A stretch of 63,133 nt of DNA, taken from contig OZ287759.1 in NCBI GenBank assembly GCA_965649765.1, forward strand, positions 15,810,001 through 15,873,133, written 5' to 3'. Below are positions 14,995-56,439 of the stretch, one piece after another (within the stretch, counting starts at the first letter, position 1; the number at the start of each line of letters is the position of its first letter). Under the pieces are notes generated by a model. That model worked only from the letters and a program-made list of their open reading frames with translations. It had not been told where the DNA came from and ran no database searches. A program made the translations under genes and the position numbers. The DNA comes from Bispira polyomma. Its lineage: Eukaryota.

Positions 14995-17875
14995 AGAATT
15001 CCAAAGCTTCACTCCAATAGTTGGAAAGGAATGCTCGCTTAATTTTTGATTCTTGACTTGGGGATGGGAAAGTCTCCTATAGACGGTCTAGATTTGATAT
15101 TATGTCTTAGCCTTTGCGCATGACATGGAATTTCGAGGATCCGCGGTGGCAGTATAGCTCTAAGATATGTTGGTGATAAGTCATGAGTAATTTTATACAT
15201 TTTTAAAACATGAATTTCCCTTCTTTCAGAGAGAGGAGACCAACCTGTCTCATTGTAAAGACTAGAGATATTTGACTTGGCAGGAGCACCTGTAACTATT
15301 CTCATAGCCTCAACAGTGAGCTTATCCAACTTTGCAAGCAAATTTTGTGGGGTTTTTTTTGAGCATACCAAGACGGGAGGAACACATCTGTACTATATTG
15401 TATATATGGTTATCCCATTTAAGATTATGTGAGATCCACATTCCAGCATGCTTGTGTGTGGGTACATTTGCAATTGGAGTGTTATAAAACACCAATCTTG
15501 GCAGGTTATTACAAGGTTTTGTTTTTAAAGAATTTAGCATAGATTCTGATTTTACAGGACTAAACTTTATTAGCCACTGATTGGCCCATTGTTCAATATG
15601 AAGGAAATCCTGGTTAATATAATTAGTTGCTTCATCCAGATTATCCACTTTAGTGAAGAGGCAAGTGTCATCTGCGAAGAGCCTTATGTTACAATGTTTA
15701 ACCACTGAAGTCATATCATTAATAAATGCCAAGAAAAGTAGTGGTCCCAATACAGAGCCTTGTGGTACCCCAGCATTAATTTTTACCCAATCAGAGAATT
15801 GTCCATTTATGATCACTTGTTGGAATCGGTTAGAAATGTAGTTCGAGAACCAGCTTAGTAAGTTTCCACTTATGCCAAACTGCCTGAGTTTAGAAATCAA
15901 ACCTTTATGCCATACTCGATCAAATGCTTTAGAAATATCAAGGTACACTACCCGTAAATCTTTACTATCATTCAAGCCACTCGAAAACTGGTCATACATT
16001 CCAACAGTTGGGTGATAGTGGATGAGCCAGATAAAAAGCCAGATTGCCACATACTTATTAACTGATTATCTCGAAAGTGATTGTACACATGTTTAAATAC
16101 TATCCTTTCAAATACTTTACCAAGTATACAAAGAAGGGAAACTGGGCGGTAGTTATCAGCATATTGTTTAGATGACTTTTTGTGTAGGGGTAAAACATTT
16201 GCTTTCTTCCAAGATGAAGGAAAAGTGAAATATTAAACAGCTTTGTTAATGGTTTAACAAGTGACTTTCCTGCCATTTTTATAAATTTTGGTGAGATTCC
16301 ATCAGGCCCATATGATTTGTTACAGTCTAAAACTCTAATCTTGTCATATACTTCACTTTCCTGAACAGTAATATTAAGCAGTGAATTGCCAGTAGATGGC
16401 TGGTATGGAGGAAGAGTGGCTGAGGAATCATCAATATGAGATGATGAAGCAAAAAAGTTGTTAAAATGTGCTGCTTTTGCATGATCACCAACAATAATGT
16501 CCCCATTATCAGTGATAAGGGGTGGAAAAGAGTTGTCATTTGATGCCGAAAGATAAGATTTGGCAAGACTGTAAAATTTCTTAGTTGATATTTTCTCAGT
16601 ATTTATGTTGGTATATTTGGATTGAAGAAATTCTCTTTTTGCCTTTTAAACTTCCGTTATGTATATGTTTCTTTCATGTCTGAATCTAGTCCATGTCTGG
16701 ACTATTAACAGTTTTGGCCCTGTTATGTAACCTATTAAGCTGATACTTAAGCTTTCTAAGGTAACTGTTATAGAAGGATTTATCTTAGGGTCTAATAGTA
16801 ACCATCTTGTTTGGAATAAACTGATTTGCAGCAGATAGAATTATGTTAGTTATGAGGTCGCAGGATTCGTTAACAGATTTGTTGTGAGAAAAACACTCAT
16901 CCCAGTTCATTTTATCTAAGTAAGATTTATAAGAATTGCAGTCAGCTGCATTAAACTGCCATATTTGTCTTTTGAAAGCTTTGGCATGTCTAAATTTGAA
17001 TATTAATTTCAGATGAATTGTACAATGATCATTATTGGCAAGAGGTGGCAAGACACCCACATTGCGTACATACATTGGACAATTTGAGAGGCACTGGTCT
17101 AAAATGGTACTTGATCTATCTGTGATCCTAGTTGGTTGGTTGATATGTATTTTTAAGCTATTACAATTGGCAAAAATATCTAATTTTTTACCTGCATTAG
17201 TATTTGGATCAGAAATATTACTCTGTTGGGCTTTTTCTACAGATATTTGAAATTGTTCATAAAAGTTTATTGAAGTTAGGGGTCGGTAGACTGTGCAAAT
17301 CAAAAGTTTATTATTATTGCATCTTATTTCAAGCCACAGCGCTTCAACATCGTTTACTTCAAGATTTTTTCTACATTTTGCAGCTATGCCATTTCTGACC
17401 CAGCATAAAATGCCCCCTGCATGCCGGGGTCTATTTATAAAACAAATGGAGACTGAAAACCATCAATTAAGTAATCGTTCATATCATATGTATCTGTTAA
17501 CCACGTTTCGCTGACTGTTATAATGTTGAAACTTTTAGAAAGGTCATGTTTAATAAGATCTAGTTTTACGTTGGTACCGTTAAGTTTTGTTTTAATGCTT
17601 CTTATGTTCAAATGACATATTGTTATATCAGACAATTGCATATTTCTATCATCGCATTGTATATTATTTCTATTACCACCTTGTGGACCTGGATTTGTTT
17701 CAATGTCCCATGCAATTAAAAAGTTAGAATCACAAAATGCATAGCGTTTTGAAGCTGCAGGATTTGGAAAAATTCTACAGGTGTTAGAGAAAAGCCATCT
17801 TTTGCCAGATCTGTTGAACCTAAACCTCACAAAATATACTATTGCAGTCCAAAATTGTACTTCATAATCAGCCAT
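14995..17875 (-). pseudogene. LINE ORF2: apurinic-type endonuclease plus reverse transcriptase, with frameshifts and deletions, 3'-truncated
   Basis: APE motifs ICHLNIRSI, IITVSETWL, VYRP, PTRIT...TILD, NDHC. RT motifs YLDISKAFDRVWH, GVPQGSVLGPLLF, LFADD, WANQWLIKF. ORF pieces 17435-17875, 16785-17303, 15322-16050 and 15039-15371. Confidence 0.95.
17684..17707 (-). other. 2A-like ribosomal skipping (StopGo) motif DIETNPGP just upstream of the endonuclease
   Basis: Reads ...NFLIAW-DIETNPG-P, an exact match to D(V/I)ExNPG/P, in frame with the APE domain. Confidence 0.85.
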
Positions 17876-18695
17876 TAGAAAATGTATCGGAGACTGAATC
17901 TAGCAAAACACACACCAGCAAACTAATGATACAAAAATGCAGATGAAAGTGACAGGTATGATTAGACAACACAATTACAGACATTATAAACTAGTTGAAT
18001 ATGATATATAGGTGAAAAATATATAAAGATATATATAATAATAATTACATAAATAAGAAGAAAAGATAATATAAAATAGGAACAAATTAGAGGAAAGGAT
18101 CACAAAATGCTACAGGTATGTACACGTGTTTTACAACAAATATCAGCTGTGCAGAACTAAATCAAATATGGAAATGCATGTAAGTACATATATATATATA
18201 TATATTTTTTTTACTATTTTTTATTTTTTTTTCACACAAGGATGTAGACTTTCTTTTAGAGTTTAGCTCTGAACTCTGGTTGCACAAAACATATTTGATT
18301 GCCTTGTGAATAAATGGAAATTATATTATATATCACATATGTAGCAGTTAATTAACTGGCACCAAAATATATAGCATATGCTACATGGTAAGGCATGCAG
18401 ATGGTTGCATGTAAAGAATTTAAAATCTTTTATGTACTTTACCTGAACAGTAAAGTAAAAGCCACTACTTTATATTATACACAATTAGAAAATGTATATG
18501 AAACATATGTATGTTCTTTTAACAGTAACAGCTTTCTCACATAATATATAAAGAGGATTACATCCTTTACACTCAAGTTAAAGCAGTCTTAATACAGGTT
18601 ATTTGGAGATGAATAGATTGTCCAGGTACGAAAGAAAGGAATGTAAAAAAGAATAAATGGATAATAAATTAGTTGTCACAGATAGTTGTACATGT

Positions 18696-19137
18696 TTACA
18701 AAGTTGAGCGGAGGTCCTCAAGAAGTGACCCTAGTACATTTTTCCCTGTCCAGTTCTTTGAATCCCAAATGGCATCGTCTTCAAGGGAAAGGCCAACACC
18801 CCAGTAATTGTCATGTGGGTTGGCTTCAGCCAGTCTGGTGTCACCAGTTTGTTTTAGAAACTTAGCCAAGTGGTCATTTTGCTGGAATTTAGCTTTTAGT
18901 CCAATTTTCATGTGGTTATCGCTGACTTGCCTCCACAGTGATGAGTCAAAATTTCTTATCCTTTTGCCAATGGATTTGGCAATCTTAGGTTCGGCCGTTT
19001 GCAATATTTTTTGAGCTGAATCACTGTCGTGCAATTGGATTGCCTTTTTGAACATGTAGAAGTGTTCCACAGAGTGAAAGGACTGATTGTCTGCTGTGAA
19101 TTTACAATGGTGGTGATTCTTGAGTGAAAAAAGCTGT
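18696..19137 (-). other. NADAR (YbiA-like / DUF1768) domain at the C-terminus of ORF1
   Basis: Family motifs in the expected order: AFF..ESP(LSN)HH, F..D...F.SVEHFYM.KKA, P..AK.IGK.I.NFD...W, M..GL.AKF.QN..L...L..TG, LAEANPHDNYWGVG, GKNVLG.LL..LR, then stop at 18696. Confidence 0.92.
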
Positions 19138-20005
19138 GATATTGTTTTTGGTGATGGTAGAAACATAATATGGTTGTAACTCTTGTGGCAATTTTGAAAT
19201 ATCATTCACTGTATACAGGTTACTATTAACCACCAGTTTATCTACCGAAAGACGAGCTTTAAACTTTCCACCGGATCTGTATGCAGCTTGCAGAATAGGC
19301 CTGAAAACTCTCCTTCGCTCTAGAACCTCGAGAGGGAAATCCTCGACAACAATGATGCCAATTTGGCGAAACTTATCTTTGGACTTCAGAATGAACAACT
19401 TGTCCTTGAAGTGGTTGAATTTTACAATAATTGGCTGACTGGTCCCTCGCTTAGGTCCGGTTCTATGGGCCCTCACTATAGCTCTACTGTCCAGGACAAT
19501 GTTCACATCCTGACATAAAGCCAGCACAGTTGACTCACAGTTTTTAACTGTGTCAGAATTTTGTAGCTTCACATTTAGGAACTGCAGGTTATCCTTTCTC
19601 ATGCGGGTTTCTAGGTTGACCAAGCGTTCAGTTAATGTGTTGATTTGGGTATCAGTAAATAATTGTTTAGATCTAAGTTATGTATTTTCAGTTTCAAGAG
19701 CTTTAATTTTACCATCAAGTATGTCTGTCTGTGACTGAAGTTAATTGTTGTTTAACACTGTCAACTGATTGGTGCAAGGTTTCAAGTTCTCCATGAAGTT
19801 TTGTATCTAAGGATGTAATTGACTGCCTTAAGTTCCCTAATTCATCATAAATTGGGCTTAATCCTTCCTCAAGAATGGTGCGCACATCAGAGACTGAGAG
19901 TTGAGGTGAGACAGGAGACACAAGGACATGGTTCCTCTTTGGGGTCTTTGCAGTTGGAGCTATAGTGCTCTGTGACTTCCCTCTCTGTATACCTCTAGAT
20001 GTCAT
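18696..20005 (-). pseudogene. LINE ORF1 (basic N-terminus, coiled coil, L1/Tnp22-like RRM+CTD) fused to a C-terminal NADAR domain; about 440 aa when repaired
   Basis: Three consecutive ORF pieces (19715-20005, 19102-19623, 18696-19205) join through two frameshifts and one stop. Bridging frame read by hand: DILDGKIKALETENT*LRSKQLFTDTQINTLTERLVNLETRMRKDNLQF. ORF1 motifs: RKDNLQF, IVRAHRTG, QPIIVKF, VEDFPLEVLERRR, ARLSVDKLVVN. Confidence 0.85.
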
Positions 20006-21478
20006 CTTATATGGGGATAAGTCTTAAACACCTTTGAAATTAATTTAGTACCCTGAACATGTATTGATTGACGATTTATAAGGCTGCACAAGTCATTTAG
20101 GTCACTAAGTATGAAGTCCCAGGCCAAGCTATTCTGTTAATTAATTAACAATTCAAAGAAAGACAGCAAGTACATTCCAATTGTGAAAGTTTGTGCACCA
20201 AGAAATTATTGCACAAACCCTGTTTGAAGAAATTAAACTCTACATTGCTATCAATCAGTTGACACGTGTTAAGCTCCTGTAGCTATTTGTGATCCTATCC
20301 CTGGTAAGTTAAGACATGGTGTAATGATTGTGTTGACCCTCAGTGGTACCTCCTGTTTAAAAAGTCAAGCTGGTGTGACACTTGATTATTTGTGACACAT
20401 GATTAGTCTTTGTTTGAAAAAATTATATTTTCTGTACAAAATATCTTACATAAATATATATCCTTACACAGACTAAATAACTTTGAAAAAACATCTACTT
20501 AATCCTGGTAGTTTATTATCAATAACTTGCTAGTCTTGAGTATAAACTCTATGTATGTCCACATGAAAACTTTAAAAAACACAGGAGCACCAAAAACACA
20601 ACTTCATCACACAAACACTGATGTGCATCCATGTGATGTTAATTAACATAAGATTCCATAGATACTTAAAATAACAATACTGGTGATGGTGGTAATTTAA
20701 GTGACCTATGATAACATTTTAATAAACAGTTTCAATAGGCACTATATAAATTATAATTTGTATTTAAATAACACATAGTTTGAGAGATTCAAGTATAAAC
20801 CTTTTTATTTTTTAAGGGGCGAACACTTTCACAGTCACAATTTGAAATACCATAGAATTGAAATATTACTTTTGTCAACATATTTGTCTGATGCATTTTG
20901 CATTTCTTATTAACTTGAGTCAGGTGTTTTCCATAATTGGCTCTTTTGGTGCATGCTAAATGTAAGTAAAACTCTAATAGCACTAAATTAATACATATGA
21001 TGGTATTATAAAAAAAATGCGAAATATGATGTTAAATTTAATATTTTTTTGGATTGCTCTTGAATACACGAAGGAGGACATTACCCTTCTAAATTCTAAT
21101 TACTTTCAACAACAAAACAAGAACTCAAAAATGCTGCAGTTAAATCAATTATGTGTTTCACGGAACTTACTGTAATGAATATGGAGAGCTTTTGTTATGC
21201 TACACATTTCTACAATAGCAACAAATTGAGAAAACCTAAATCTCTATTTCAGGACTGGCAGAGTAGTAGTAAAAGCTATGGCCACAGTGTAGAGTGTTTA
21301 TGACTGATTTTTCTTGTCACAATTCTTGATACTGATGACCTAATACACTTTGTTAGATAGATTGAAACTGATTCCCATATTTGATTAAAATTGTGGTAAT
21401 GGGTAAAAACAGTTATAACAATACAAGTGAAAGTTCTGTTAACTTAAATACACATGTCCTTGACATATACTGTTTTCT

Positions 21479-21665: not shown

Positions 21666-24600
21666 AAATACAAGCATTCAAATTTACACTGCAAATATAG
21701 TCAATCTGGAAATTAGAGTCACATGAGTAAATTATTTAACTTTTTTTGTCATTTTAAAAGTAATTTCTGAATAGGAAATGGCCCATATTTTATGCTGGTA
21801 GCTCCACACATGAATTGTAAATACATGATTTTAATTTAAACAGTAAGATATCCAAATATAAACCAACATGTAAACCTCTGACCTCTCGTATATTAAATGA
21901 TGAAAAAGAGTTTTTTAAACTAATATACTGTGGGATACACACAATTTTGGTGACAGAAAACTTGTTGCCTTATCAATTTGCTTAATTAAGTTCTAGTAGA
22001 ATATCCACTTCTATAATACTATAACAAACATAAATGAATATAAAAAACACTACAAAAAATACATCAGATGTCATGCTGAATTTTTACTTTTAACGAACAA
22101 AAACCAAATATGCTTCCACTAAATCAATGACGTAAGTTACTGAAATAAAAACCTGTTTGGAGTTTGGTAATGCTGCACATCTTTCTCTGCAACAGCGACT
22201 AATTGGGAAACTAAATGTCTATTTAAAACTGGCGTAGTTGTGAAAACTAGTCAAAATCTAAATTATGTATATAAGGACTGATGTTATTGATCATGTGGAA
22301 AATGTTAGATAAACTCAAAACACATTTATTACTTTACTTTAGATTTATAATATAAATCTCTACTTTGACCAAATGTTTGAAAAAAGCTCTCTTGATTATT
22401 TTATTTGTTAGAATGAACTGTGTTGTCTAAGTGTGATATTTGTTTTACATATTCAAAATACTTTTTTTCATTTGTAATATCAAATAAACGTATCATGTTG
22501 TATATTGAAATATTACTAGAATTGGGGCTTAGAAACATGTGTTCATTGCTATTCACAAGTCACACAAATTAAATGTCACATAATTCTGGTATTTTCCTCT
22601 TGATTTTGGAACTAATAAAAAACTCTCACTGATAAAATCAGTAGAAAAGGAGTGTTGCAAGTAGTATTGACATTGGTTTATATTAAGTGTAAGGGATGTC
22701 CGTGCCTGGCATAGGTAATAAATTAGATTTCTTGACTATCATATGAAATTGCCGAAAATTTAATGATGGACCCTTGAAATAAATGCTAAATGTGAGTTGC
22801 TCTCATTAAAATTCCAACAATAAAGAGAAAATCCCAGATGATGGATTTAGATTCAGACAGTAAAGTTACTTAAACAATGCATTGCAGTAATATAAGCATA
22901 TAAGCTTTACATAAGAGTTGTCAATTATTATCTATGCTATGCTGTGTTTATGATTCTTTGCCACAGTGCTGTATGTCCCTCCTGATGTGGGACTCAAAAT
23001 TCTATTGCTTATTTCTGTTATAAAGAATAGTAGTCCTTGGACAAGTGACAGTCGTCAGAAATCAACTTGATTCACTGGGATGGTCAGATTAACAGAAACC
23101 TAGGTTAAAGAAAATTTTGATTTTGGGCACCAACACTGAAAACGATGCACTAGTTCTGAGCTGGGATTCTCAATGTCAACTCAGGCTTAAGCTCATATTC
23201 ATCTCAAATATAGACAATGTGTAAATTCTGGTATATAAAAATCACCTGTACTTGTGACCACTTAACTTAATAATGGCTTTAGACACTGAATTCAAATGTG
23301 AAGTGAGATTTTAGATATCTTTACTGTATTCAGAGTTACAGATAATTCAGATCTATATAGGTTTTTTGTTCATGTGGGTATTTCTACTGATATCTCTCCA
23401 TACATAAAAAACCCCTATGCATCATCAATTTTTTTTTATAATCCATGTCACCACTTTCATAGCTGTTGCCTCTCAACAGTCCGGCTACTTTGTAGTTCAT
23501 CTGTCCTTCAGGAACCTTCTACTACCTCTTTAAAACCTACCAGGAGGGCTGGATTTAGAGCTTTCTCAATTGTTTATAATCCATGTCACTTTCATAGCTG
23601 TTGCCACTCAACAGTTCGGCTACTTTGTAGTTCATCTGTCCTTCAGGAACCTTCTACTACATCTTTGAAACCCACCAGAAGAGCTGGATTTAGAGCTTTG
23701 TCCATTGCTGCCCTAATGTTATAGAATAGTTGGGCCTAGATCACTGGAAACACTTTCTGGATATTATCAATCGGTGTAACTAGACCATAACATGACTAGA
23801 TCATTTGTCTGTGTACGTTAAATATTCCAATTAAAATTCAAATCCTTTGTCTGTGTTCCTCCTATCTCTGTCTTTCCACATGTGACATCCATTAAGGATT
23901 AAATCTCTGGAAAGACAAGCCTTTCTGCTAAAAACTAACAGCCTTTCCCTGTCATCTCCTCACTAGGTCACAGATAATTAAAAGGAAGTCAGAGTTTGTG
24001 ACTAGAGTACTAAAAGCCAACAGACCTGTGGCTGTAATGTTCAAAATTTTAAGCTCAACTTTAAAGTCACCGGTCTGTATCTCTTGCATGTGAGAATATG
24101 CATAAAATATGATTGGTTGTCCATCAACCCCCACTGTGCCCCCTGTAGTGGACCAATGCAACAATTTAGTTAAACTCTCCTGACCTTTGTGTATTTAGAG
24201 ATTGTGAATAGAACAAAGACGAAGATGTAGTCGCATAAAAGGTAGTTGGGAATACACCTTGTATATAGGGCAATCCCTAAAGTTGCCCCTAAATTTATTC
24301 CTACTAGTGTACAACCAATGCAAATTATTGGTTGCTTTAGATTGTTTAGATTGGCCGGCAGTCGCTAACCAAGGTTGTAAAAGTGGGACAAAGTATATAT
24401 TATTGGGAAAATCTACTACTTCCAGGCACAAAGACATTTTGTCATTTTTATTAGACTGGCTGTGTTGCTAGCTTTTCCCCACTCCTTGTGAATAGACAAT
24501 TAGTATGTAAGACTACATTTAATGTTGTGTGCCTAGCATTTTAACATAACTAAACACACTTAACATGACAAGAGATTTTACTTTTGTTAAGGAATCCTTC

Positions 24601-33101: not shown

Positions 33102-36100
33102 GTTGACTGCTTGCCAACAGACATTGCCTCTGGGAGTAACAAATGCTGTCGACTGCTTTTATTGGTTTTAAGGTTTTTCCTTAAACCAGAAAGTGTTTCT
33201 ATTGAGCTAAGCTCAAGAGGGACACTATTTCATAACATAGCTGCATCAATTGTGAAAGCTCTAGATTCAGCCCTTTTAGTGGGTTTTACAGAGAAAATAA
33301 CAAATTTCTTTCACCTTTTTAGGTTACTAAAGGAAAGATAAGCAGCATTGTGGGGGTGGGGGAGGGGGTTTTGAAAGAGGTTACATGGATTTTTACCAAA
33401 ATTCGATAGTGACCAGGCAGTGTGTAAATTATACATGAACTTTTATCATACAGATATAGACATGTTTAGTACACAAAAAAAAATACTAAAAAATAACAAT
33501 ACTGGTGATGGTGGTAATTTAAGTGACCTATGATGACATATTAATAAAAAGTTCAATAAGTGCTATGTAAATTAATAATTTGTATTTAAATAACACATAG
33601 GTTGAGAGATCCAGATATTAAACTTTTTTATTTCTTAAGGTGCGAACACTTTCACAGTCACAGTTAAAATACCATAGAATTGAAATATCACTTTCGTCAA
33701 CATATTTGTCTGATGTATTCTGCATTTCTTATGAACTTGAGTGTTTTTCAGAAGGTAAATTGGCTCTTTTGGTGCATGCTAAATGTAAGTAAAACTCTAA
33801 TAGCACTAAATTAATACATATGATGGTATTATAAAAAAATGCAAAATATGATGTTAAAATTTTATATTTTTTGTATTGCTCTTGAATACACAAAGGAGGA
33901 CATTAACCTTCTAAATTTTAATGACTTTCAACAAAAAAACAAGAACTCAAAAAATGCTGCCGTTAAATCAATTATGTGTTTGACGGAACTCAATGTAAAG
34001 AATATGGAGAGCTTTTGTTATGCTACATATTTCTACAATAGCAACAAATTGAGAAAACTAAATCTCTATTTCAGGACTGGCAGAGTAGTAGTAAAAGCTA
34101 TGGCCACAGTGTAGAGTGTTTATGGCTGATTTTTCTTGTCACAATTCTTGATACTGATGACCTAATACATTTGTTAGATAGATTGATACTGATGTGTCTT
34201 AACAGTGAACAATCATTTGGGTGGTGTTCATAACAGATACATAATAGCATGAGAATAATCTTTAATTTTATGATATTCCCATATTTGATTAGAATAAAAA
34301 GTTATAACAATACAAGTGAAAGTTCTGTTAACTTAAATACACGTGTCCTTGGCATATACTGTTTTCTAGGGGCCCACTGCACTGGCCAGGTGGTTAGAAA
34401 GTGCCTGCTTCACAAACATTGGCTTCGTACCAATTTGGGTTTTTAATATCCTATTTATTCGATCATGTGGGAAATTTTGTCAGGTACTTGCAGTAGTTTG
34501 GTGGCTTTCAGTGCTTCAAGCACTGGTTTATTCTGCCATCAAATCTGGTGGTCATAAATAGATGCATTTAAATTTACACTGCAAATATAGTCAATCTGAA
34601 AATTAGAGTCACAATAGTAAATTGTCTGGTGACAGAAAAATTGTTGTCTTATCAATTTGCTTAATTAAGTTAAAATAAAATATCCACTTCTATTTTACTC
34701 TCTACAAAATAATACATCAGATGTCATGCTGAATTTAAGTTATTGTATTACCTTTTGTGTAAGAATAGGGACATTGACATTTAAATTCTGTTGACTTTTT
34801 AAAAAGAAGAACCAAATAGGCTTCCACTAAATCAATTACATCTATGACGTAAGTTACTGAAATAAAAACCTGTTTGAGGTTTGGTTATGCTGCACATCTC
34901 CACAACAGCAACTAATTGGGAAACTAAATGTCTATTTAAAACTAGCGTAGTAGTGAAAACTAGTCAAAATCTAAATTATGTATATAAGGACAGATGCTAT
35001 TGATTATGTAAATAGTTTAAGATAAACTTGTTACATTTATCACTTTACTTTAGATTTATAATACAAATCTCTACTTTGACCAAATTTTTTAAAAAAACTC
35101 TGTTGATTATTTTCTTTGTTATAATGAACCATGTCTGAGTGTGATTTTTGTTCTACTTATTTAACATAACACCATAGAAATAGCTCTGATACTTTTTTAT
35201 TATACCAAAATAAACCATATTGAAATATTACTGGAGTAGTAGTTGAGAAACATGAGTTTATTGCTATTCACAAGTCACACAAATTAAATGCTATCAAATT
35301 CTGGTAATTTCCTCTTGATTTTGGAACTAATAAAAAAACTCTCGCAGATACAATCAGTAGAAAAGGAGTGTTGCAAGTGGTATTGACATTTGTTTATAGT
35401 AAGTGTAAGGGATGTCCGTGTCTGGCATAAGTAATAGGTTAGATTTCCCGACTATCATATGAAATTGCCGAAAATTTAATGATGGACCCTTGAGATAAAT
35501 GCTAAATGTGAGTTGCTCTCATTAGAATACCAACAGTGAAGAGAAAATCCCAGATGATGGATTTAGATAGTAAAGTTACTTAAACAATGCATTGCAGCAA
35601 TATAAGCATATAAACTTTACATAAGAGTTGTCAGGTATCATCTATGCTATGCTGTGTTTTCGAGTATTTGCCACAGTGCTGTATGTCCATCATGATGTGG
35701 GACTCAAACTTCTATTGCGTATTTCTGTTTAAAGAACCTTGGTTAAAGAAAAATTTTGATTCTGGGCACTAACACTGAAAGGGATGCACTGGTTCTGAAT
35801 TGGGATCTTAATGTCAACTCAGACTTAAGCTCATACACATCTCAAATATAGACTATGTGTAAATTCTGGTATATAAAAATCACCTGTTCTTGTGACCGGT
35901 TAACTTAATAATAGCTTTAGAAACTGAATTTAAATATAAAGTGAGATTTTAGATATCTTTACTGTATTCAGAGTTACAGATAATTCAGATCTAAAAAGGT
36001 TTTTTGTTCATATGGGTATTCCTGATGTCCCGCCATACATTAAAAAAATCCTATTCATCCTCAAATTTTGTTGATAATCTATGTCACTGTCATAGCTGTT

Positions 36101-37184
36101 GCCACTCAACAGTCCGGCTACTTCGTAGTTCATCTGTCCTTCAAGAACCTTCTACTACATCTTTGAAACCTACCAGGAGGGCTGGATTTAGAGCTTTCTC
36201 AATTGTTTAAAATCTATGTCACTTTAATAGCTGTTGCCACTCAACAGTCCGGCTACTTCGTAGTTCATCTGTCCTTCAGGAACCTTCTACTACATCTTTG
36301 AAACCCACCAGAAGAGCTGGATTTAGAGCTTTCTCAATTTCTGCCTCAATGTTATAGAATAGTTGAGCTTAGATCACTGGAAACACTTTCTGGATACTAT
36401 CAATCGGTGTAACTAGACCATAACATGACTAGATCCTTTGTCTGTGTTCCTCCTATCTCTGTCTTTCCACATGTGACATCCATTAAGGATTAAATTTCTG
36501 GAAAGACAAGCCTTTCTGTTAAAAAATAACACCCTTTCCCTGTCATCTCCCCACTAGGTCATAGATAATTAAACAGGTAAAAGAAAGTCAGAGTTTGTGA
36601 CCAGAGTACAAAAAGTCAACAGACCTGTGGCTGTAAAGTTCAAAATTTTAAGCTCAACTTTAAAATCACCGGTCCGTATCTCTTACATGAGAGAATATGC
36701 ATAAAATCTGATTGGCTGTCCATCAACCCCCACTGTACCCCCAATTTGTAGTGAACCAATGCAACAATTTAGTTATAAATTTCTAATTTATGGAAATTGG
36801 TTATTCACAGCAGGAGAGGTTGCTTTAGAATCAACAGGGTCAAGTTGACCACGCATTGCATTCGCAAGAAACACAGGGGTCGAGTAAAAATCTGTCGATT
36901 GTATCAGCAAATTAGACTCTCCTGACCTTCTACTTAGAGAGCGTGAATAGAACAAAGATGGAGTTGTAGTCACATTAAAAGTAGTTGATAATACACCTTG
37001 TATACAGGGCAATCATTAAAGTTTCCCCTAAATTTATTCCAAATAGTGTATGACCAGTGCAAATTATTGGTTGCTTTAGATCGTTTAGATTGGCCGGCAG
37101 TCGCTAACCAAGGTCGTAAAAGTGGGACAAAGCCTATATTATTAGGAAAATCTACTAGTGCCAGGCGCAAAGACATTTTGTGAC

Positions 37185-54222: not shown

Positions 54223-55592
54223 TTATTTTTCTTGGTATTTAGTAATGATATGACTTCCGTGTTTAAACAGTGTAACATAAGGCTCTTCGCAGATGACACT
54301 TGCCTCTTTACTAAAGTGGATAATCTGGATGAAGCAACTAATTATATCAACCAGGATTTATGTCATATTGAACAATGGGCCAATCAGTGGCTAATAAAGT
54401 TTAGTCCTGTAAAATCAGAATCCATGCTAATTTCTTTAAAAACAAAACCTTGTAATAACCTGCCAAGATTGGTGTTTTATAACCATATATACAATATAAT
54501 ACAGATGTGTTCGTCCCGTCTTGGTATACTCTTTGAATTTTATGCTCAGTAGACCAGTTCTTGAGAAAATCTACCTTTCTTACATAAGGCCTATAATGGG
54601 ATATGGTGACATTGTATGGTCTGGAGCACCACAAAATTTGATTGCAAAGTTGGATAAGCTCACTGTTGAGGCTATGAGAATAGTTACAGGTGCTCCTGCC
54701 AGGTCAAATATCTCTAGTCTTTACAATGAGACAGGCTGGTCTCTGCTCTCTAAAAGAAGGGAAATTTATGTTTTAAAAATGCTGTAAAAAATTACTCATG
54801 ACTTATCACCAACATATCTTAGAGCTGTACTGCCACTGTGGATCTTTGAAATAGCATTTCATGCGCAAAGGTAAAGACATAATATCAAATCTAGACCTTC
54901 TATAGGAGACTTTCCTATCCCTAAGTCGAGAATCAAATTAATCGAGCATTCCTTTCCAACTATTAGAGTGAAGCTTTGGAATTCTCTTCCTCAAACATTA
55001 ACTTGTTTTAATTCTTTTGGTTCCTTTTCAAAAGCACTCCAAAACCTTTATTTTTCTCACAGCTCACGAACAAAAGCTAAAAATCGACTCTACAGCTTTG
55101 GGGTCAGATCCACCAATATCACAAATACCTGTTTAAGATTAGGATGCAGTAAGCTGAACACTCACTTAAAACACAACCTTCATGTAGCAGACGATGAATC
55201 ATGTGCTTGCGGTTACCCTATCGAAGATCCTGAACATTACTTCTTTACTTGTCCATTATATAACAACATTCGACATGAATTTATAAATTCTGTGATGACT
55301 TCAGTCAATACTCAATTATCATCAGATTTATTTTTATCTGGAAGTTGTGACCTAAATTATGAAACAAACATTAAAATATTTGAAGCAGTCCACACTTTTT
55401 TACACAAATCAAAATGCTTTTAAATAAGACTGTTTTTGACCACACACCAGCATTCTATCATTATTCATTCTTGTCAGTGTTTTTCATCCATTGTCTTCAT
55501 TTTGTAAATATCTCATTGGAAGAAGGCTTTGTGTAATTGTATTTTTGCGATTGTTGCCTCATTGTGAATAAAATATGTTTAAACAAAACAAC
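54223..55592 (+). mobile_element. 5'-truncated second copy of the same CR1-group LINE with an intact 3' end
   Basis: RT (LFADDTCLFTKVDNLDEATNYINQD) is nearly identical to 15322-16050. It has the C-terminal Cys/His motif CACG..IEDPEHYFFTC and a 3' terminus AATAAAATATGTTTAAAC-AAAACAAC. 9-bp TSD ACTAAGTGA at 54214-54222 and 55593-55601. Confidence 0.95.
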
Positions 55593-56439
55593 ACTAAGTG
55601 AATGTTTCCATGCAGGCAATTTTCTCAGGTGCTGACCCGATGGCCAACGTCAATTGTATCAGTTTCATTGATTTTCCATGTGAGCAACACAGATTTTTTC
55701 GATCCTGGTAGTGGAAAAAAAATCGCCCAGCATCGCATGTTGCCATGTAAACATTGCTGATTCTTTATTAATGACTCAAAAATTATTGAAAGTAAAAATT
55801 TTTCGTAAATATATGGTGAGAAAGCTTATTTTATTTGGTTTTATAAATGTTGAAAAATGGGTAAAATATTTAAGTTTAAATATAGGTATCCATTTTTAAC
55901 AAAATAATTCTATTGCAACATAAAAATTGCCGATTGCCCGTCGGACATCGGCTGATCACCGTCACCAATTGCCGAGATGGAAACGTGCAACTTTGAACCT
56001 GTCATTGCATTAAAAAATTACCATTAAATCATCAACATGTAAATGAATTATTATACAATTCAAACATTTAAGATATCTAGTTTTGCTAGCTTTCTTAGCC
56101 AAACTTAAGATGGGCGGCCAAACTTAGAACCCTAAGTTGGACTATAGCCCCATCTTAAGATTGGTCAAATCGGAAGTTAGGCTCTAACATATACATATCA
56201 CAGAAATATATATGCTGAGCTAACCAGAACACCAAGCCCAGTGGTAAGACACTGTCTTAAGGTTACATTTTTTGGGACAGTTCGTCCACCTGGGAGCCAA
56301 GTGTTACCACTTAAAATGCAAAGATTGTGTTGACATTAATAAGCAAACAGCAATCAGGAATGACCTTGGCTTTTGTATCAAATACACTTTGGTAGCCAAA
56401 AAACAATCTCTGGGTCTGTATATGAATCCTAATGTCGTG

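What the first reader, a model, noticed from the sequence alone, without database searches (positions are those of the whole stretch)
18696..20005. LINE retrotransposon whose ORF1 is fused to a NADAR (ADP-ribose/N-glycosidase) domain: a candidate transposon-borne anti-ADP-ribosylation system
Seen: a NADAR domain with its EANPHD.YWG and GKN.LG motifs lies inside the LINE, between the L1-type RRM/CTD and the inter-ORF spacer, on the same strand. The domain's N-terminal motif (AFFTQESP) is in the ORF1 frame and the rest follows one frameshift away, so the ancestral protein was coiled coil-RRM-CTD-NADAR. Established: NADAR proteins include the YbiA N-glycosidase and the antitoxin of the bacterial DarT1-NADAR system, which removes ADP-ribose from guanine in DNA. 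Guanine-specific DNA ADP-ribosyltransferases occur in animals (pierisins in butterflies, CARP-1 in clams). The usual catalogue of LINE ORF1 accessory modules is RRM, PHD, CCHC and esterase; I do not know NADAR as a characterised member of it, but I cannot search the literature. Inference: the ORF1p RNP could deliver an eraser that protects element RNA or nascent cDNA from host ADP-ribosylation, by analogy with viral macrodomains. This copy is dead, so function would have to be tested on a consensus.
Basis: partly seen in the sequence, partly recalled or inferred. Interest (0 to 1): 0.92.

Follow-up and report, generated by a model that had tools for sequence, protein, structure and literature searches.

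The report
Dead LINE copy, ORF1 fused to NADAR
This is a broken copy of a jumping gene (LINE) whose RNA-binding ORF1 protein ends in a conserved NADAR enzyme domain, of the kind that strips ADP-ribose off nucleic-acid bases. The fusion is real, abundant and under selection, but it has been noted once before in oyster LINEs and its role is untested.

Summary
Window 18696-20005 (minus strand) is the decayed ORF1 of a LINE copy spanning about 14996-20618. A NADAR domain (Pfam E 1.3e-40) directly follows an L1-type coiled coil-RRM-CTD. The "frameshift" is a 14-bp deletion relative to a 97%-identical intact sibling that encodes a 439-aa fusion.

The fusion is not a one-off. The genome, probably an annelid's, has over 1,900 candidate NADAR loci and at least 11 ORF1-NADAR families below 60% identity, many with intact frames. 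The catalytic residues Glu, Lys and Glu (YbiA type) are invariant. Between families synonymous sites are saturated while dN is about 0.3.

New here: the same ORF1-NADAR module sits on two unrelated ORF2 backbones. One is L1/Tx1-like. The other, the window's own, is a non-L1 LINE with a 2A "NPGP" peptide before its endonuclease. So the module was exchanged between LINE lineages.

The anti-ADP-ribosylation role is plausible but untested: I found no host transferase and no RNA data.

A 2025 paper (PMC12477816) already notes NADAR in oyster Tx1 ORF1 proteins. This scan also found the same fusion on other DNA of this genome, and follow-up s1-576401 reached the same verdict. I rate it a new variant of a known kind, of moderate interest.

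The parts
14996..20618 (-). Whole LINE copy, 5'-complete, 3'-truncated and decayed (type A backbone)
   Evidence: blastn against the intact sibling L031:664-6437 gives 96-97% identity. The sibling runs about 600 bp further to AATAAA and a poly(A) tail and has a target-site duplication.
20006..20618 (-). 5' untranslated region
   Evidence: It aligns to L031 upstream of the ORF1 ATG.
18696..20005 (-). ORF1 remnant (the finding): coiled coil-RRM-CTD-NADAR, broken in three places
   Evidence: The intact 439-aa version is in L002/L031.
19715..20005 (-). N-terminal region and start of the coiled coil (96-aa ORF)
   Evidence: The model of the sibling shows one long helix over residues 38-134.
19729..19732 (-). 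4-bp insertion (duplicated ACAG) that shifts the frame within the coiled coil
   Evidence: Alignment A1, columns 574-577.
19678..19680 (-). TAA nonsense codon where the sibling has GAA
   Evidence: Alignment A1.
19147..19599 (-). L1-type RRM and C-terminal domain
   Evidence: Foldseek matches the sibling model to the human LINE-1 ORF1p trimer 2YKP/2YKO at E 6.5e-7. Pfam Transposase_22 does not hit.
18699..19146 (-). NADAR (YbiA-subfamily) domain coding region
   Evidence: PF08719 E 1.3e-40. 8BAU phmmer E 5e-18. Catalytic equivalents of E43, K50, E125, D130 and W133 are present.
19118..19119 (-). Junction of the 14-bp deletion that separates the ORF1 frame from the NADAR frame
   Evidence: Alignment A1, columns 1188-1201.
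17876..18695 (-). Inter-ORF spacer of about 820 bp
   Evidence: The spacer has the same length in the intact sibling, L031 2602-3417.
14996..17875 (-). ORF2 remnant (leader, 2A, APE endonuclease, reverse transcriptase) with several frameshifts and deletions
   Evidence: tblastn pieces fall in three frames. Indels lie at about 17439, 17211, 16695, 16225, 16001, 15351-15359 and 15047. RVT_1 E 4.9e-23.
17684..17707 (-). 2A-like ribosome-skipping motif DIETNPGP just before the endonuclease
   Evidence: The motif D[IV]E[TLV]NPGP is conserved at this place in every type A family, although the leaders around it differ. Such motifs are known in CR1/L2/Rex1/Crack/Ingi LINEs (PMC3708506).
15322..16050 (-). 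Reverse-transcriptase core
   Evidence: PF00078 E 4.9e-23.
54227..55593 (+). Second, 5'-truncated copy of the same LINE family (3' end of ORF2, 3' UTR, A-rich tail)
   Evidence: blastn to L031:5603-7036 gives 93-96% identity.

Best explanation
Shown: the window holds a dead copy of a recently active LINE family whose ORF1 protein is a single polypeptide. It consists of an N-terminal tail, a long coiled coil, an RRM, a CTD (the L1 ORF1p architecture) and a C-terminal YbiA-type NADAR domain with all known catalytic and ADP-ribose-contacting residues. The fusion is shared by many diverged LINE families in this genome and in other public assemblies, is kept by purifying selection, and has been passed as a whole ORF1 module between an L1/Tx1-like backbone and a 2A-bearing non-L1 backbone, the window's. 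Inferred: ORF1p trimers coat the element's own RNA, so the RNP would carry many copies of an active N-glycohydrolase. The most likely job is to remove base-linked ADP-ribose (on guanine or cytosine) from the element's RNA, its nascent cDNA or the target DNA. That would keep templates readable during target-primed reverse transcription, acting as a repair or counter-defence activity like phage NADARs and viral macrodomains. I put about 0.9 on 'functional, selected enzyme domain of ORF1p', about 0.4-0.45 on 'its substrate is ADP-ribosylated nucleic acid', and about 0.2-0.25 on 'it counters a dedicated host transferase'.
For: The domain and fusion are real. The fold matches the ADP-ribose-bound P. 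nicotianae NADAR and L1 ORF1p. Equivalents of E43, K50, E125, D130 and W133 of the solved enzyme are invariant in 22 of 22 intact ORF1s from at least 11 families. NADAR and the CTD are the best-conserved parts, at 49-50% mean identity against 30% for the coiled coil. Between families dN of NADAR is 0.29-0.36 while synonymous sites are saturated. There are over 1,900 candidate loci, and about 40 of the 150 scored have open frames of 400 aa or more. Of the 150 best cluster representatives in 1.84 billion proteins, 72 carry the ORF1 part. The module persists on two unrelated ORF2 backbones. YbiA-type and animal NADARs hydrolyse ADP-ribosyl-guanine and -cytosine on DNA and RNA (PMC11543638, PMC11125620, PMC12945103). 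Phage NADARs act as counter-defence (PMC11825919, abstract as listed).
Against: There is no biochemical or expression evidence, and no RNA runs were on record. No nucleic-acid ADP-ribosyltransferase was found in this genome, although the DarT and Enterotoxin_a searches were blank with silent controls and so are uninformative. E. coli YbiA itself works on riboflavin intermediates, so the fold does not fix the substrate. R79 of the solved enzyme is replaced conservatively by Lys, and D86 and R93 align with Ser.
Confidence: 0.45

Rival explanations
1. The NADAR domain is an active N-glycosidase, but its substrate is a small molecule or an RNA 5' end rather than an ADP-ribosylated base. Examples would be NAD-derived metabolites, NAD caps, or reactive ribosyl intermediates of the kind E. 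coli YbiA hydrolyses.
For: It belongs to the YbiA subfamily, with Glu in the last strand. YbiA's established activity is on riboflavin intermediates (PMC11543638 introduction). The Ectocarpus paper suggests 'RNA processing' for transposon NADARs.
Against: Tethering an enzyme at high copy number to an RNA-coating protein makes little sense for a diffusible metabolite. The residues that hold the ADP-ribose pyrophosphate and distal ribose are conserved.
Confidence: 0.2
2. The domain removes ADP-ribose from proteins, either the element's own ORF1p/ORF2p or host factors modified by PARPs at the nick made during integration.
For: This rests on inference only. LINE integration makes DNA nicks that attract PARPs, and N-linked protein ADP-ribosylation exists.
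Against: The NADAR papers I read report activity on nucleic-acid bases and nucleotides, and I saw no protein substrate described. Macrodomains are the usual protein erasers.
Confidence: 0.1
3. The domain is kept for a non-catalytic role, such as extra nucleic-acid binding, chaperoning or oligomer packing.
For: ORF1p accessory modules are often binding modules such as CCHC and PHD (established knowledge). A lysine near the active site (K75 equivalent) that the NADAR paper links to DNA recognition is conserved in 21 of 22 sequences.
Against: The catalytic Glu, Lys and Glu are invariant across families at 30-60% identity. That is not expected for a purely structural role.
Confidence: 0.07
4. NADAR is a neutral passenger or a one-off capture in this copy.
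For: None beyond the fact that this particular copy is dead.
Against: There are hundreds of copies, at least 11 families, intact frames, saturated dS with low dN, and the module is present in other assemblies.
Confidence: 0.02

Closest known systems
ORF1 proteins of Tx1 LINE families of the Pacific oyster with YbiA-family NADAR domains, noted in passing in PMC12477816 (Genome Biol 2025)
   Same: The architecture is the same idea: a LINE ORF1 protein carrying a YbiA-type NADAR domain in a spiralian animal. Most families in this genome (type B) are also L1/Tx1-like by ORF2.
   Different: The window's family has a non-L1 ORF2: no zf-RVT, only weak partial similarity to human L1 ORF2p, and a 2A peptide. 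The host is probably an annelid. The oyster note gives no analysis of selection, catalytic residues, copy number or module exchange. I could not compare sequences directly because Repbase is not on hand.
Phytophthora nicotianae NADAR (PDB 8BAU) and E. coli YbiA (2B3W), YbiA subfamily of the NADAR superfamily
   Same: The fold matches (TM 0.71-0.73). Equivalents of E43, K50, E125, D130, W89 and W133 are conserved, with Glu rather than Asp or His in the last strand.
   Different: Those are stand-alone proteins, whereas here the domain is the C-terminus of an RNA-coating trimeric protein. D86 and R93 of 8BAU align with Ser and R79 aligns with Lys. Activity is untested.
DarT1-NADAR toxin-antitoxin systems and orphan phage NADARs
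   Same: The enzyme superfamily is the same. The idea of a mobile element carrying an eraser of base ADP-ribosylation matches phage NADARs that neutralise DarT1 (PMC11825919).
   Different: There is no partner toxin. The catalytic position holds Glu of the YbiA type, not Asp of the BC4488 type. The setting is eukaryotic and retrotransposon-borne.
Human LINE-1 ORF1p (type II ORF1p: coiled coil, RRM, CTD)
   Same: The predicted structure matches over about 210 columns, including the end of the coiled coil, the RRM and the CTD.
   Different: Sequence similarity is marginal (phmmer E 0.075, no Transposase_22 hit), and there is an extra 150-aa enzyme domain.
Ectocarpus Gypsy elements with NADAR at the N-terminus of Pol (PMC12477816)
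   Same: Another retrotransposon class acquired a YbiA-type NADAR.
   Different: That case is an LTR element with the domain in a different protein (Pol), and its NADAR is said to be closest to bacterial ones, so it is probably an independent capture.

Membership tests
NADAR superfamily, YbiA subfamily (PF08719) | Profile match above the curated cut-off | tested here: met
   139.7 bits against 35.1 for the window ORF, and 141.8 bits for the intact sibling.
NADAR superfamily, YbiA subfamily (PF08719) | YbiA-like fold | tested here: met
   Foldseek gives 8BAU E 2e-10, TM 0.73, and 2B3W TM 0.71. The model has pLDDT 83.
NADAR superfamily, YbiA subfamily (PF08719) | Conserved Glu and Lys of the active site, and Glu (not Asp or His) in the last strand | tested here: met
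   Equivalents of E43, K50 and E125 are invariant in 22 of 22 intact ORF1s and present in the window copy.
NADAR superfamily, YbiA subfamily (PF08719) | N-glycosidic hydrolase activity (ADP-ribosyl-base or riboflavin intermediates) | not testable with these tools
   This needs an enzyme assay.
L1-type (type II) ORF1p | Coiled coil followed by RRM and CTD | tested here: met
   The model has a helix over 38-134, then RRM and CTD. It matches the human L1 ORF1p trimer at E 6.5e-7, TM 0.61-0.66.
L1-type (type II) ORF1p | Pfam Transposase_22 match | tested here: not met
   No hit at E 0.1. phmmer to 2YKP gives only E 0.075.
L1/Tx1 clade LINE (by ORF2) | ORF2 closely alignable with L1 ORF2p over endonuclease and RT, with a C-terminal zf-RVT | tested here: not met
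   The window's family gives 84 bits over residues 292-740 only and has no zf-RVT. Type B elements of the same genome give 315 bits over residues 5-892 and do have zf-RVT.
2A-bearing APE-type LINEs (Rex1, Crack, L2, L2A, CR1, Ingi; PMC3708506) | D(V/I)ExNPGP motif in the N-terminal region of ORF2p | tested here: met
   DIETNPGP lies at window 17707-17684, and the motif is conserved in all type A families.
2A-bearing APE-type LINEs (Rex1, Crack, L2, L2A, CR1, Ingi; PMC3708506) | RT phylogeny places the element in one of those clades | not tested
   No reference RT set (Repbase) was on hand. The GVPQGSVLGPLLF...FADD motif resembles the CR1/Jockey group only by my recollection.
DarT1-NADAR toxin-antitoxin system | Adjacent DarT1 toxin gene | tested here: not met
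   The neighbours are the LINE ORF2 and spacer. PF14487 has no match in the genome, although the controls were silent too.
DarT1-NADAR toxin-antitoxin system | BC4488-type catalytic Asp | tested here: not met
   The position holds Glu of the YbiA type.

The most novel reading that the evidence does not exclude
Spiralian animals use base ADP-ribosylation of nucleic acids as a restriction pathway against retroelements, and LINEs answer by carrying the eraser on the protein that coats their RNA. The module is useful enough to have been swapped between unrelated LINE lineages. Scan notes that I did not test suggest Polintons of the same genome picked it up as well.
Probability: 0.2. Interest if true: 0.85.

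Novelty: new variant of a known kind. Interest (0 to 1): 0.55.

Why it matters
LINE ORF1 proteins are thought of as RNA chaperones, with esterase as the only known enzymatic add-on. A conserved, catalytically complete NADAR on ORF1p means that many LINE particles in annelids and molluscs carry an enzyme whose known activity is reversal of base ADP-ribosylation on DNA and RNA.

If that is its role, it points to a host-transposon conflict fought through nucleic-acid ADP-ribosylation in animals. It would also give the physiological role of animal NADARs, which the NADAR papers call an open question, a concrete test system.

The exchange of the whole ORF1 module between an L1/Tx1-like and a 2A-bearing non-L1 backbone is also a clean example of modular, reticulate LINE evolution.

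Tried and rejected
- **RNA evidence:** The look-up of sequencing runs returned three runs of one study, their kind unrecorded and none on record as RNA, so I did not use read laying.
- **Host transferases:** PF14487 (DarT) and PF01375 (Enterotoxin_a) gave nothing in the genome, but nothing in the control genomes either, so this is uninformative.
- **Donor of the domain:** the word-based search with the NADAR part alone found only 3 proteins. The exhaustive search found thousands, but they carry no taxonomy. A FastTree of 200 NADAR domains clusters the ORF1-fused ones without clean monophyly, and deep nodes are weak. No donor can be named.
- **Host multi-NADAR gene:** searching the genome with a Haliotis multi-NADAR protein found only single-domain hits of 32-42% identity, many with ORF1-sized open frames, and no closer host orthologue.
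- **Clade name of the window's ORF2:** close homologues carry no source names. No Repbase was on hand.
- **Taxonomy of other ORF1-NADAR proteins:** two cluster look-ups gave no organism names for the fused ones. Only the Atlas says Annelida.
- **ORF1 of more distant type A relatives in this genome:** From other assemblies, one relative (53% RT identity) has NADAR upstream, one (57%) has only a 29-aa trace, and one (37%) has none.
- **Partner domains of other long NADAR proteins:** Pfam finds none.
- **One-off insertion or chance match:** rejected.
- **Consensus or repair:** Natural intact siblings made a read-through of the broken ORF1 unnecessary.

Full report
**What is at the coordinates.** On the minus strand of the window, three short ORFs follow each other: 19715-20005, 19102-19623 and 18696-19205. 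The last one matches Pfam NADAR (PF08719) at E 1.3e-40, covering profile positions 12-162 of 163. Downstream on the same strand lie endonuclease-like ORFs and a reverse-transcriptase ORF (15322-16050, RVT_1 E 4.9e-23).

**The ancestral protein.** A six-frame search of the window's own 1.035-Gb genome with the NADAR ORF found 1,938 first-look candidates. All 150 that were scored had E below 1e-33, at 42-100% identity, and about 40 had open frames of 400-480 aa without stops. The nearest sibling (L002/L031, 97% nucleotide identity) encodes one uninterrupted 439-aa ORF1. It is followed by an 816-bp spacer and an intact 1,056-aa ORF2 (APE + RT), then AATAAA, a poly(A) tail and a target-site duplication.

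Aligned to this sibling, the window copy has three lesions in ORF1:
- a 4-bp insertion in the coiled coil at about 19729-19732;
- a TAA at 19678-19680;
- a 14-bp deletion at 19119/19118, exactly at the CTD/NADAR junction.

ORF2 of the window copy has at least seven frameshifting or large indels, and the last 600 bp or so of the element are missing. A second, 5'-truncated copy of the same family lies at 54227-55593.

**Domain identities.** Pfam sees only NADAR in the intact ORF1 and gives no Transposase_22 hit. An AlphaFold2 model built on 27 homologues (mean pLDDT 83) shows a long helix (residues 38-134), an RRM, a CTD and a helical C-terminal domain. Foldseek against the PDB returns three kinds of match:
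- P. nicotianae NADAR with ADP-ribose (8BAU, E 2e-10, TM 0.73);
- E. coli YbiA (2B3W, TM 0.71);
- the human LINE-1 ORF1p trimer (2YKP and others, E about 1e-6, TM 0.61-0.66 over about 210 columns).

So "L1-type coiled coil-RRM-CTD plus NADAR" holds. The paper on 8BAU names E43, K50 and E125 as mechanistically relevant, and K75, R79, Y84, D86, W89, R93, D130 and W133 as ligand contacts. It states that a Glu at the E125 position defines the YbiA subfamily.

In the phmmer alignment (chain numbering is native + 2), the ORF1 domain keeps E43, K50, K75, G78, W89, E125, D130 and W133. It has Lys for R79, Phe for Y84, and Ser at D86 and R93. In 22 intact ORF1s of this genome, the equivalents of E43, K50, E125, D130 and W133 are invariant.

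**Spread and selection.** My sample of 22 distinct intact ORF1s falls into at least 11 families with under 60% identity between them. Mean pairwise identity between families is 30% for the N-terminus and coiled coil, 40% for the RRM, 50% for the CTD and 49% for NADAR. Between families, synonymous differences are saturated while dN of NADAR is 0.29-0.36. Within young families the counts are small, with omega mostly 0.3-0.8, as expected for a mix of master-lineage and post-insertion changes.

Outside this genome, the word-based search found 32 ORF1-length proteins with NADAR in other assemblies. One of them sits in full elements with an ORF2 of the same type. An exhaustive HMMER search of 1.84 billion cluster representatives with the NADAR part gave 13,317 hits. 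Of the best 150, 72 also carry the ORF1 N-terminal part. The ESM Atlas lists NADAR clusters of 415-489 aa with Annelida as the recorded phylum. Other agents of this scan took this genome for an annelid, which I did not verify further. The one-off and neutral readings are therefore refuted.

**Two backbones and a module exchange (new here).** The ORF2s behind these ORF1s are of two kinds.
- *Type B* covers most families (L037, L042, L045 and others). It has zf-RVT and aligns with human L1 ORF2p at E 9e-93 over residues 5-892, so it is L1/Tx1-like.
- *Type A* is the window's family, two further families here and one in another assembly. It lacks zf-RVT and matches L1 ORF2p only at E 4.6e-23 over part of the RT. 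It has the RT motif GVPQGSVLGPLLF...FADD and carries a conserved 2A-like motif D[IV]E[TLV]NPGP just before the endonuclease, at window 17707-17684. Such 2A motifs are described for the Rex1, Crack, L2, L2A, CR1 and Ingi clades (PMC3708506).

A and B ORF2s share only about 24% identity over part of the RT (0.05-0.07 bits per residue), against 0.38-0.64 among B elements. Their ORF1s, by contrast, are about 40-45% identical over the full length (0.74-0.87 bits per residue), nearly the same as among B elements at 0.84-1.07.

In a maximum-likelihood tree of full-length ORF1s, the A clade (support 99) is sister to the main B clade (95). The two together have support 99, and another B-type lineage (L050) falls outside. 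An AU test rejects keeping the two B groups together without A (p 0.019), with the caveat that the group was named after seeing the tree.

The histories of ORF1 and ORF2 are therefore discordant: the whole ORF1-NADAR module moved between LINE lineages. The direction L1/Tx1-like to type A is the more parsimonious, but it depends on outgroup rooting. A type-A-like element in another assembly has a more distant NADAR upstream, so there may have been more than one exchange.

**Mechanism.** It is shown that the domain has the fold and all catalytic residues of enzymes that hydrolyse ADP-ribose from guanine, and from cytosine, in DNA and RNA. These include YbiA-type and animal NADARs. It is also shown that the domain is fused without a linker to a protein that in L1 trimerises and coats its own RNA.

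It is inferred that the RNP carries many copies of an active glycohydrolase acting in cis on element RNA, cDNA or target DNA, as repair or counter-defence. Nothing here shows the substrate. I found no DarT or enterotoxin-type transferase in the genome, but the control genomes were silent as well, so the search says nothing. No RNA runs were on record. E. coli YbiA's own substrate is a riboflavin intermediate, so a small-molecule or cap-directed role remains a serious rival.

**Comparison with what is known.** The only precedent I found in the searchable literature is one passage in the Ectocarpus transposon paper. [quoted passage not shown] That paper offers a tentative RNA-processing idea (PMC12477816).

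This scan has also met the fusion several times on other DNA of the same genome, and one follow-up (s1-576401) reached the same verdict. Scan notes also mention Polinton polymerases with NADAR-like domains and a LINE ORF1 with an IMPACT domain in this genome. I did not test these.

So the kind is known, barely. What differs here is the host phylum, the non-L1, 2A-bearing backbone of the window's family, the evidence for selection and catalytic integrity, the sheer number of families, and the module exchange.

**Verdict.** I rate it a new variant of a known kind, interest 0.55.

Noticed in passing
window 17684-17707 (minus); also L031 about 3586, L032 about 3515, L056 about 2851, L034 about 9198, L057 about 5292: A canonical 2A ribosome-skipping motif (D[IV]E[TLV]NPGP) sits just upstream of the endonuclease in every type A ORF2, after leaders that differ in sequence. 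These elements keep a separate ORF1, whereas the 2013 survey found most 2A-bearing LINEs to have a single ORF.
   Followed up: partly
window 17876-18695 (minus); L031 2602-3417: The spacer between ORF1 and ORF2 is unusually long, about 820 bp, and is conserved in length within the family. Type B elements also have spacers of 0.7 kb or more. How ORF2 is translated is unexplained.
   Followed up: no
window 54227-55593 (+): A second, 5'-truncated copy of the same LINE family lies in the same window, at 93-96% identity to L031:5603-7036.
   Followed up: yes
P0039 (Haliotis rufescens XP_048255699.1, 4240 aa) and P0040-P0056: These are large proteins with 2 to 7 tandem NADAR domains, at least one from an abalone. 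This genome has no closer counterpart; a search with the abalone protein found only single-domain hits of 32-42% identity, many in ORF1-sized open frames.
   Followed up: partly
window 23435-23707 and 36068-36339: Two related 135-bp tandem duplications of about 2 copies each occur, which looks like a dispersed repeat family. The first overlaps a 116-aa ORF (23374-23724) that I did not scan against Pfam.
   Followed up: no
L059 1-545 and 2466-7373 (another assembly): A type-A-like LINE (53% RT identity) has a NADAR-bearing ORF1 remnant that is closer to type B NADARs than to the window's clade. This hints at more than one ORF1 exchange.
   Followed up: partly
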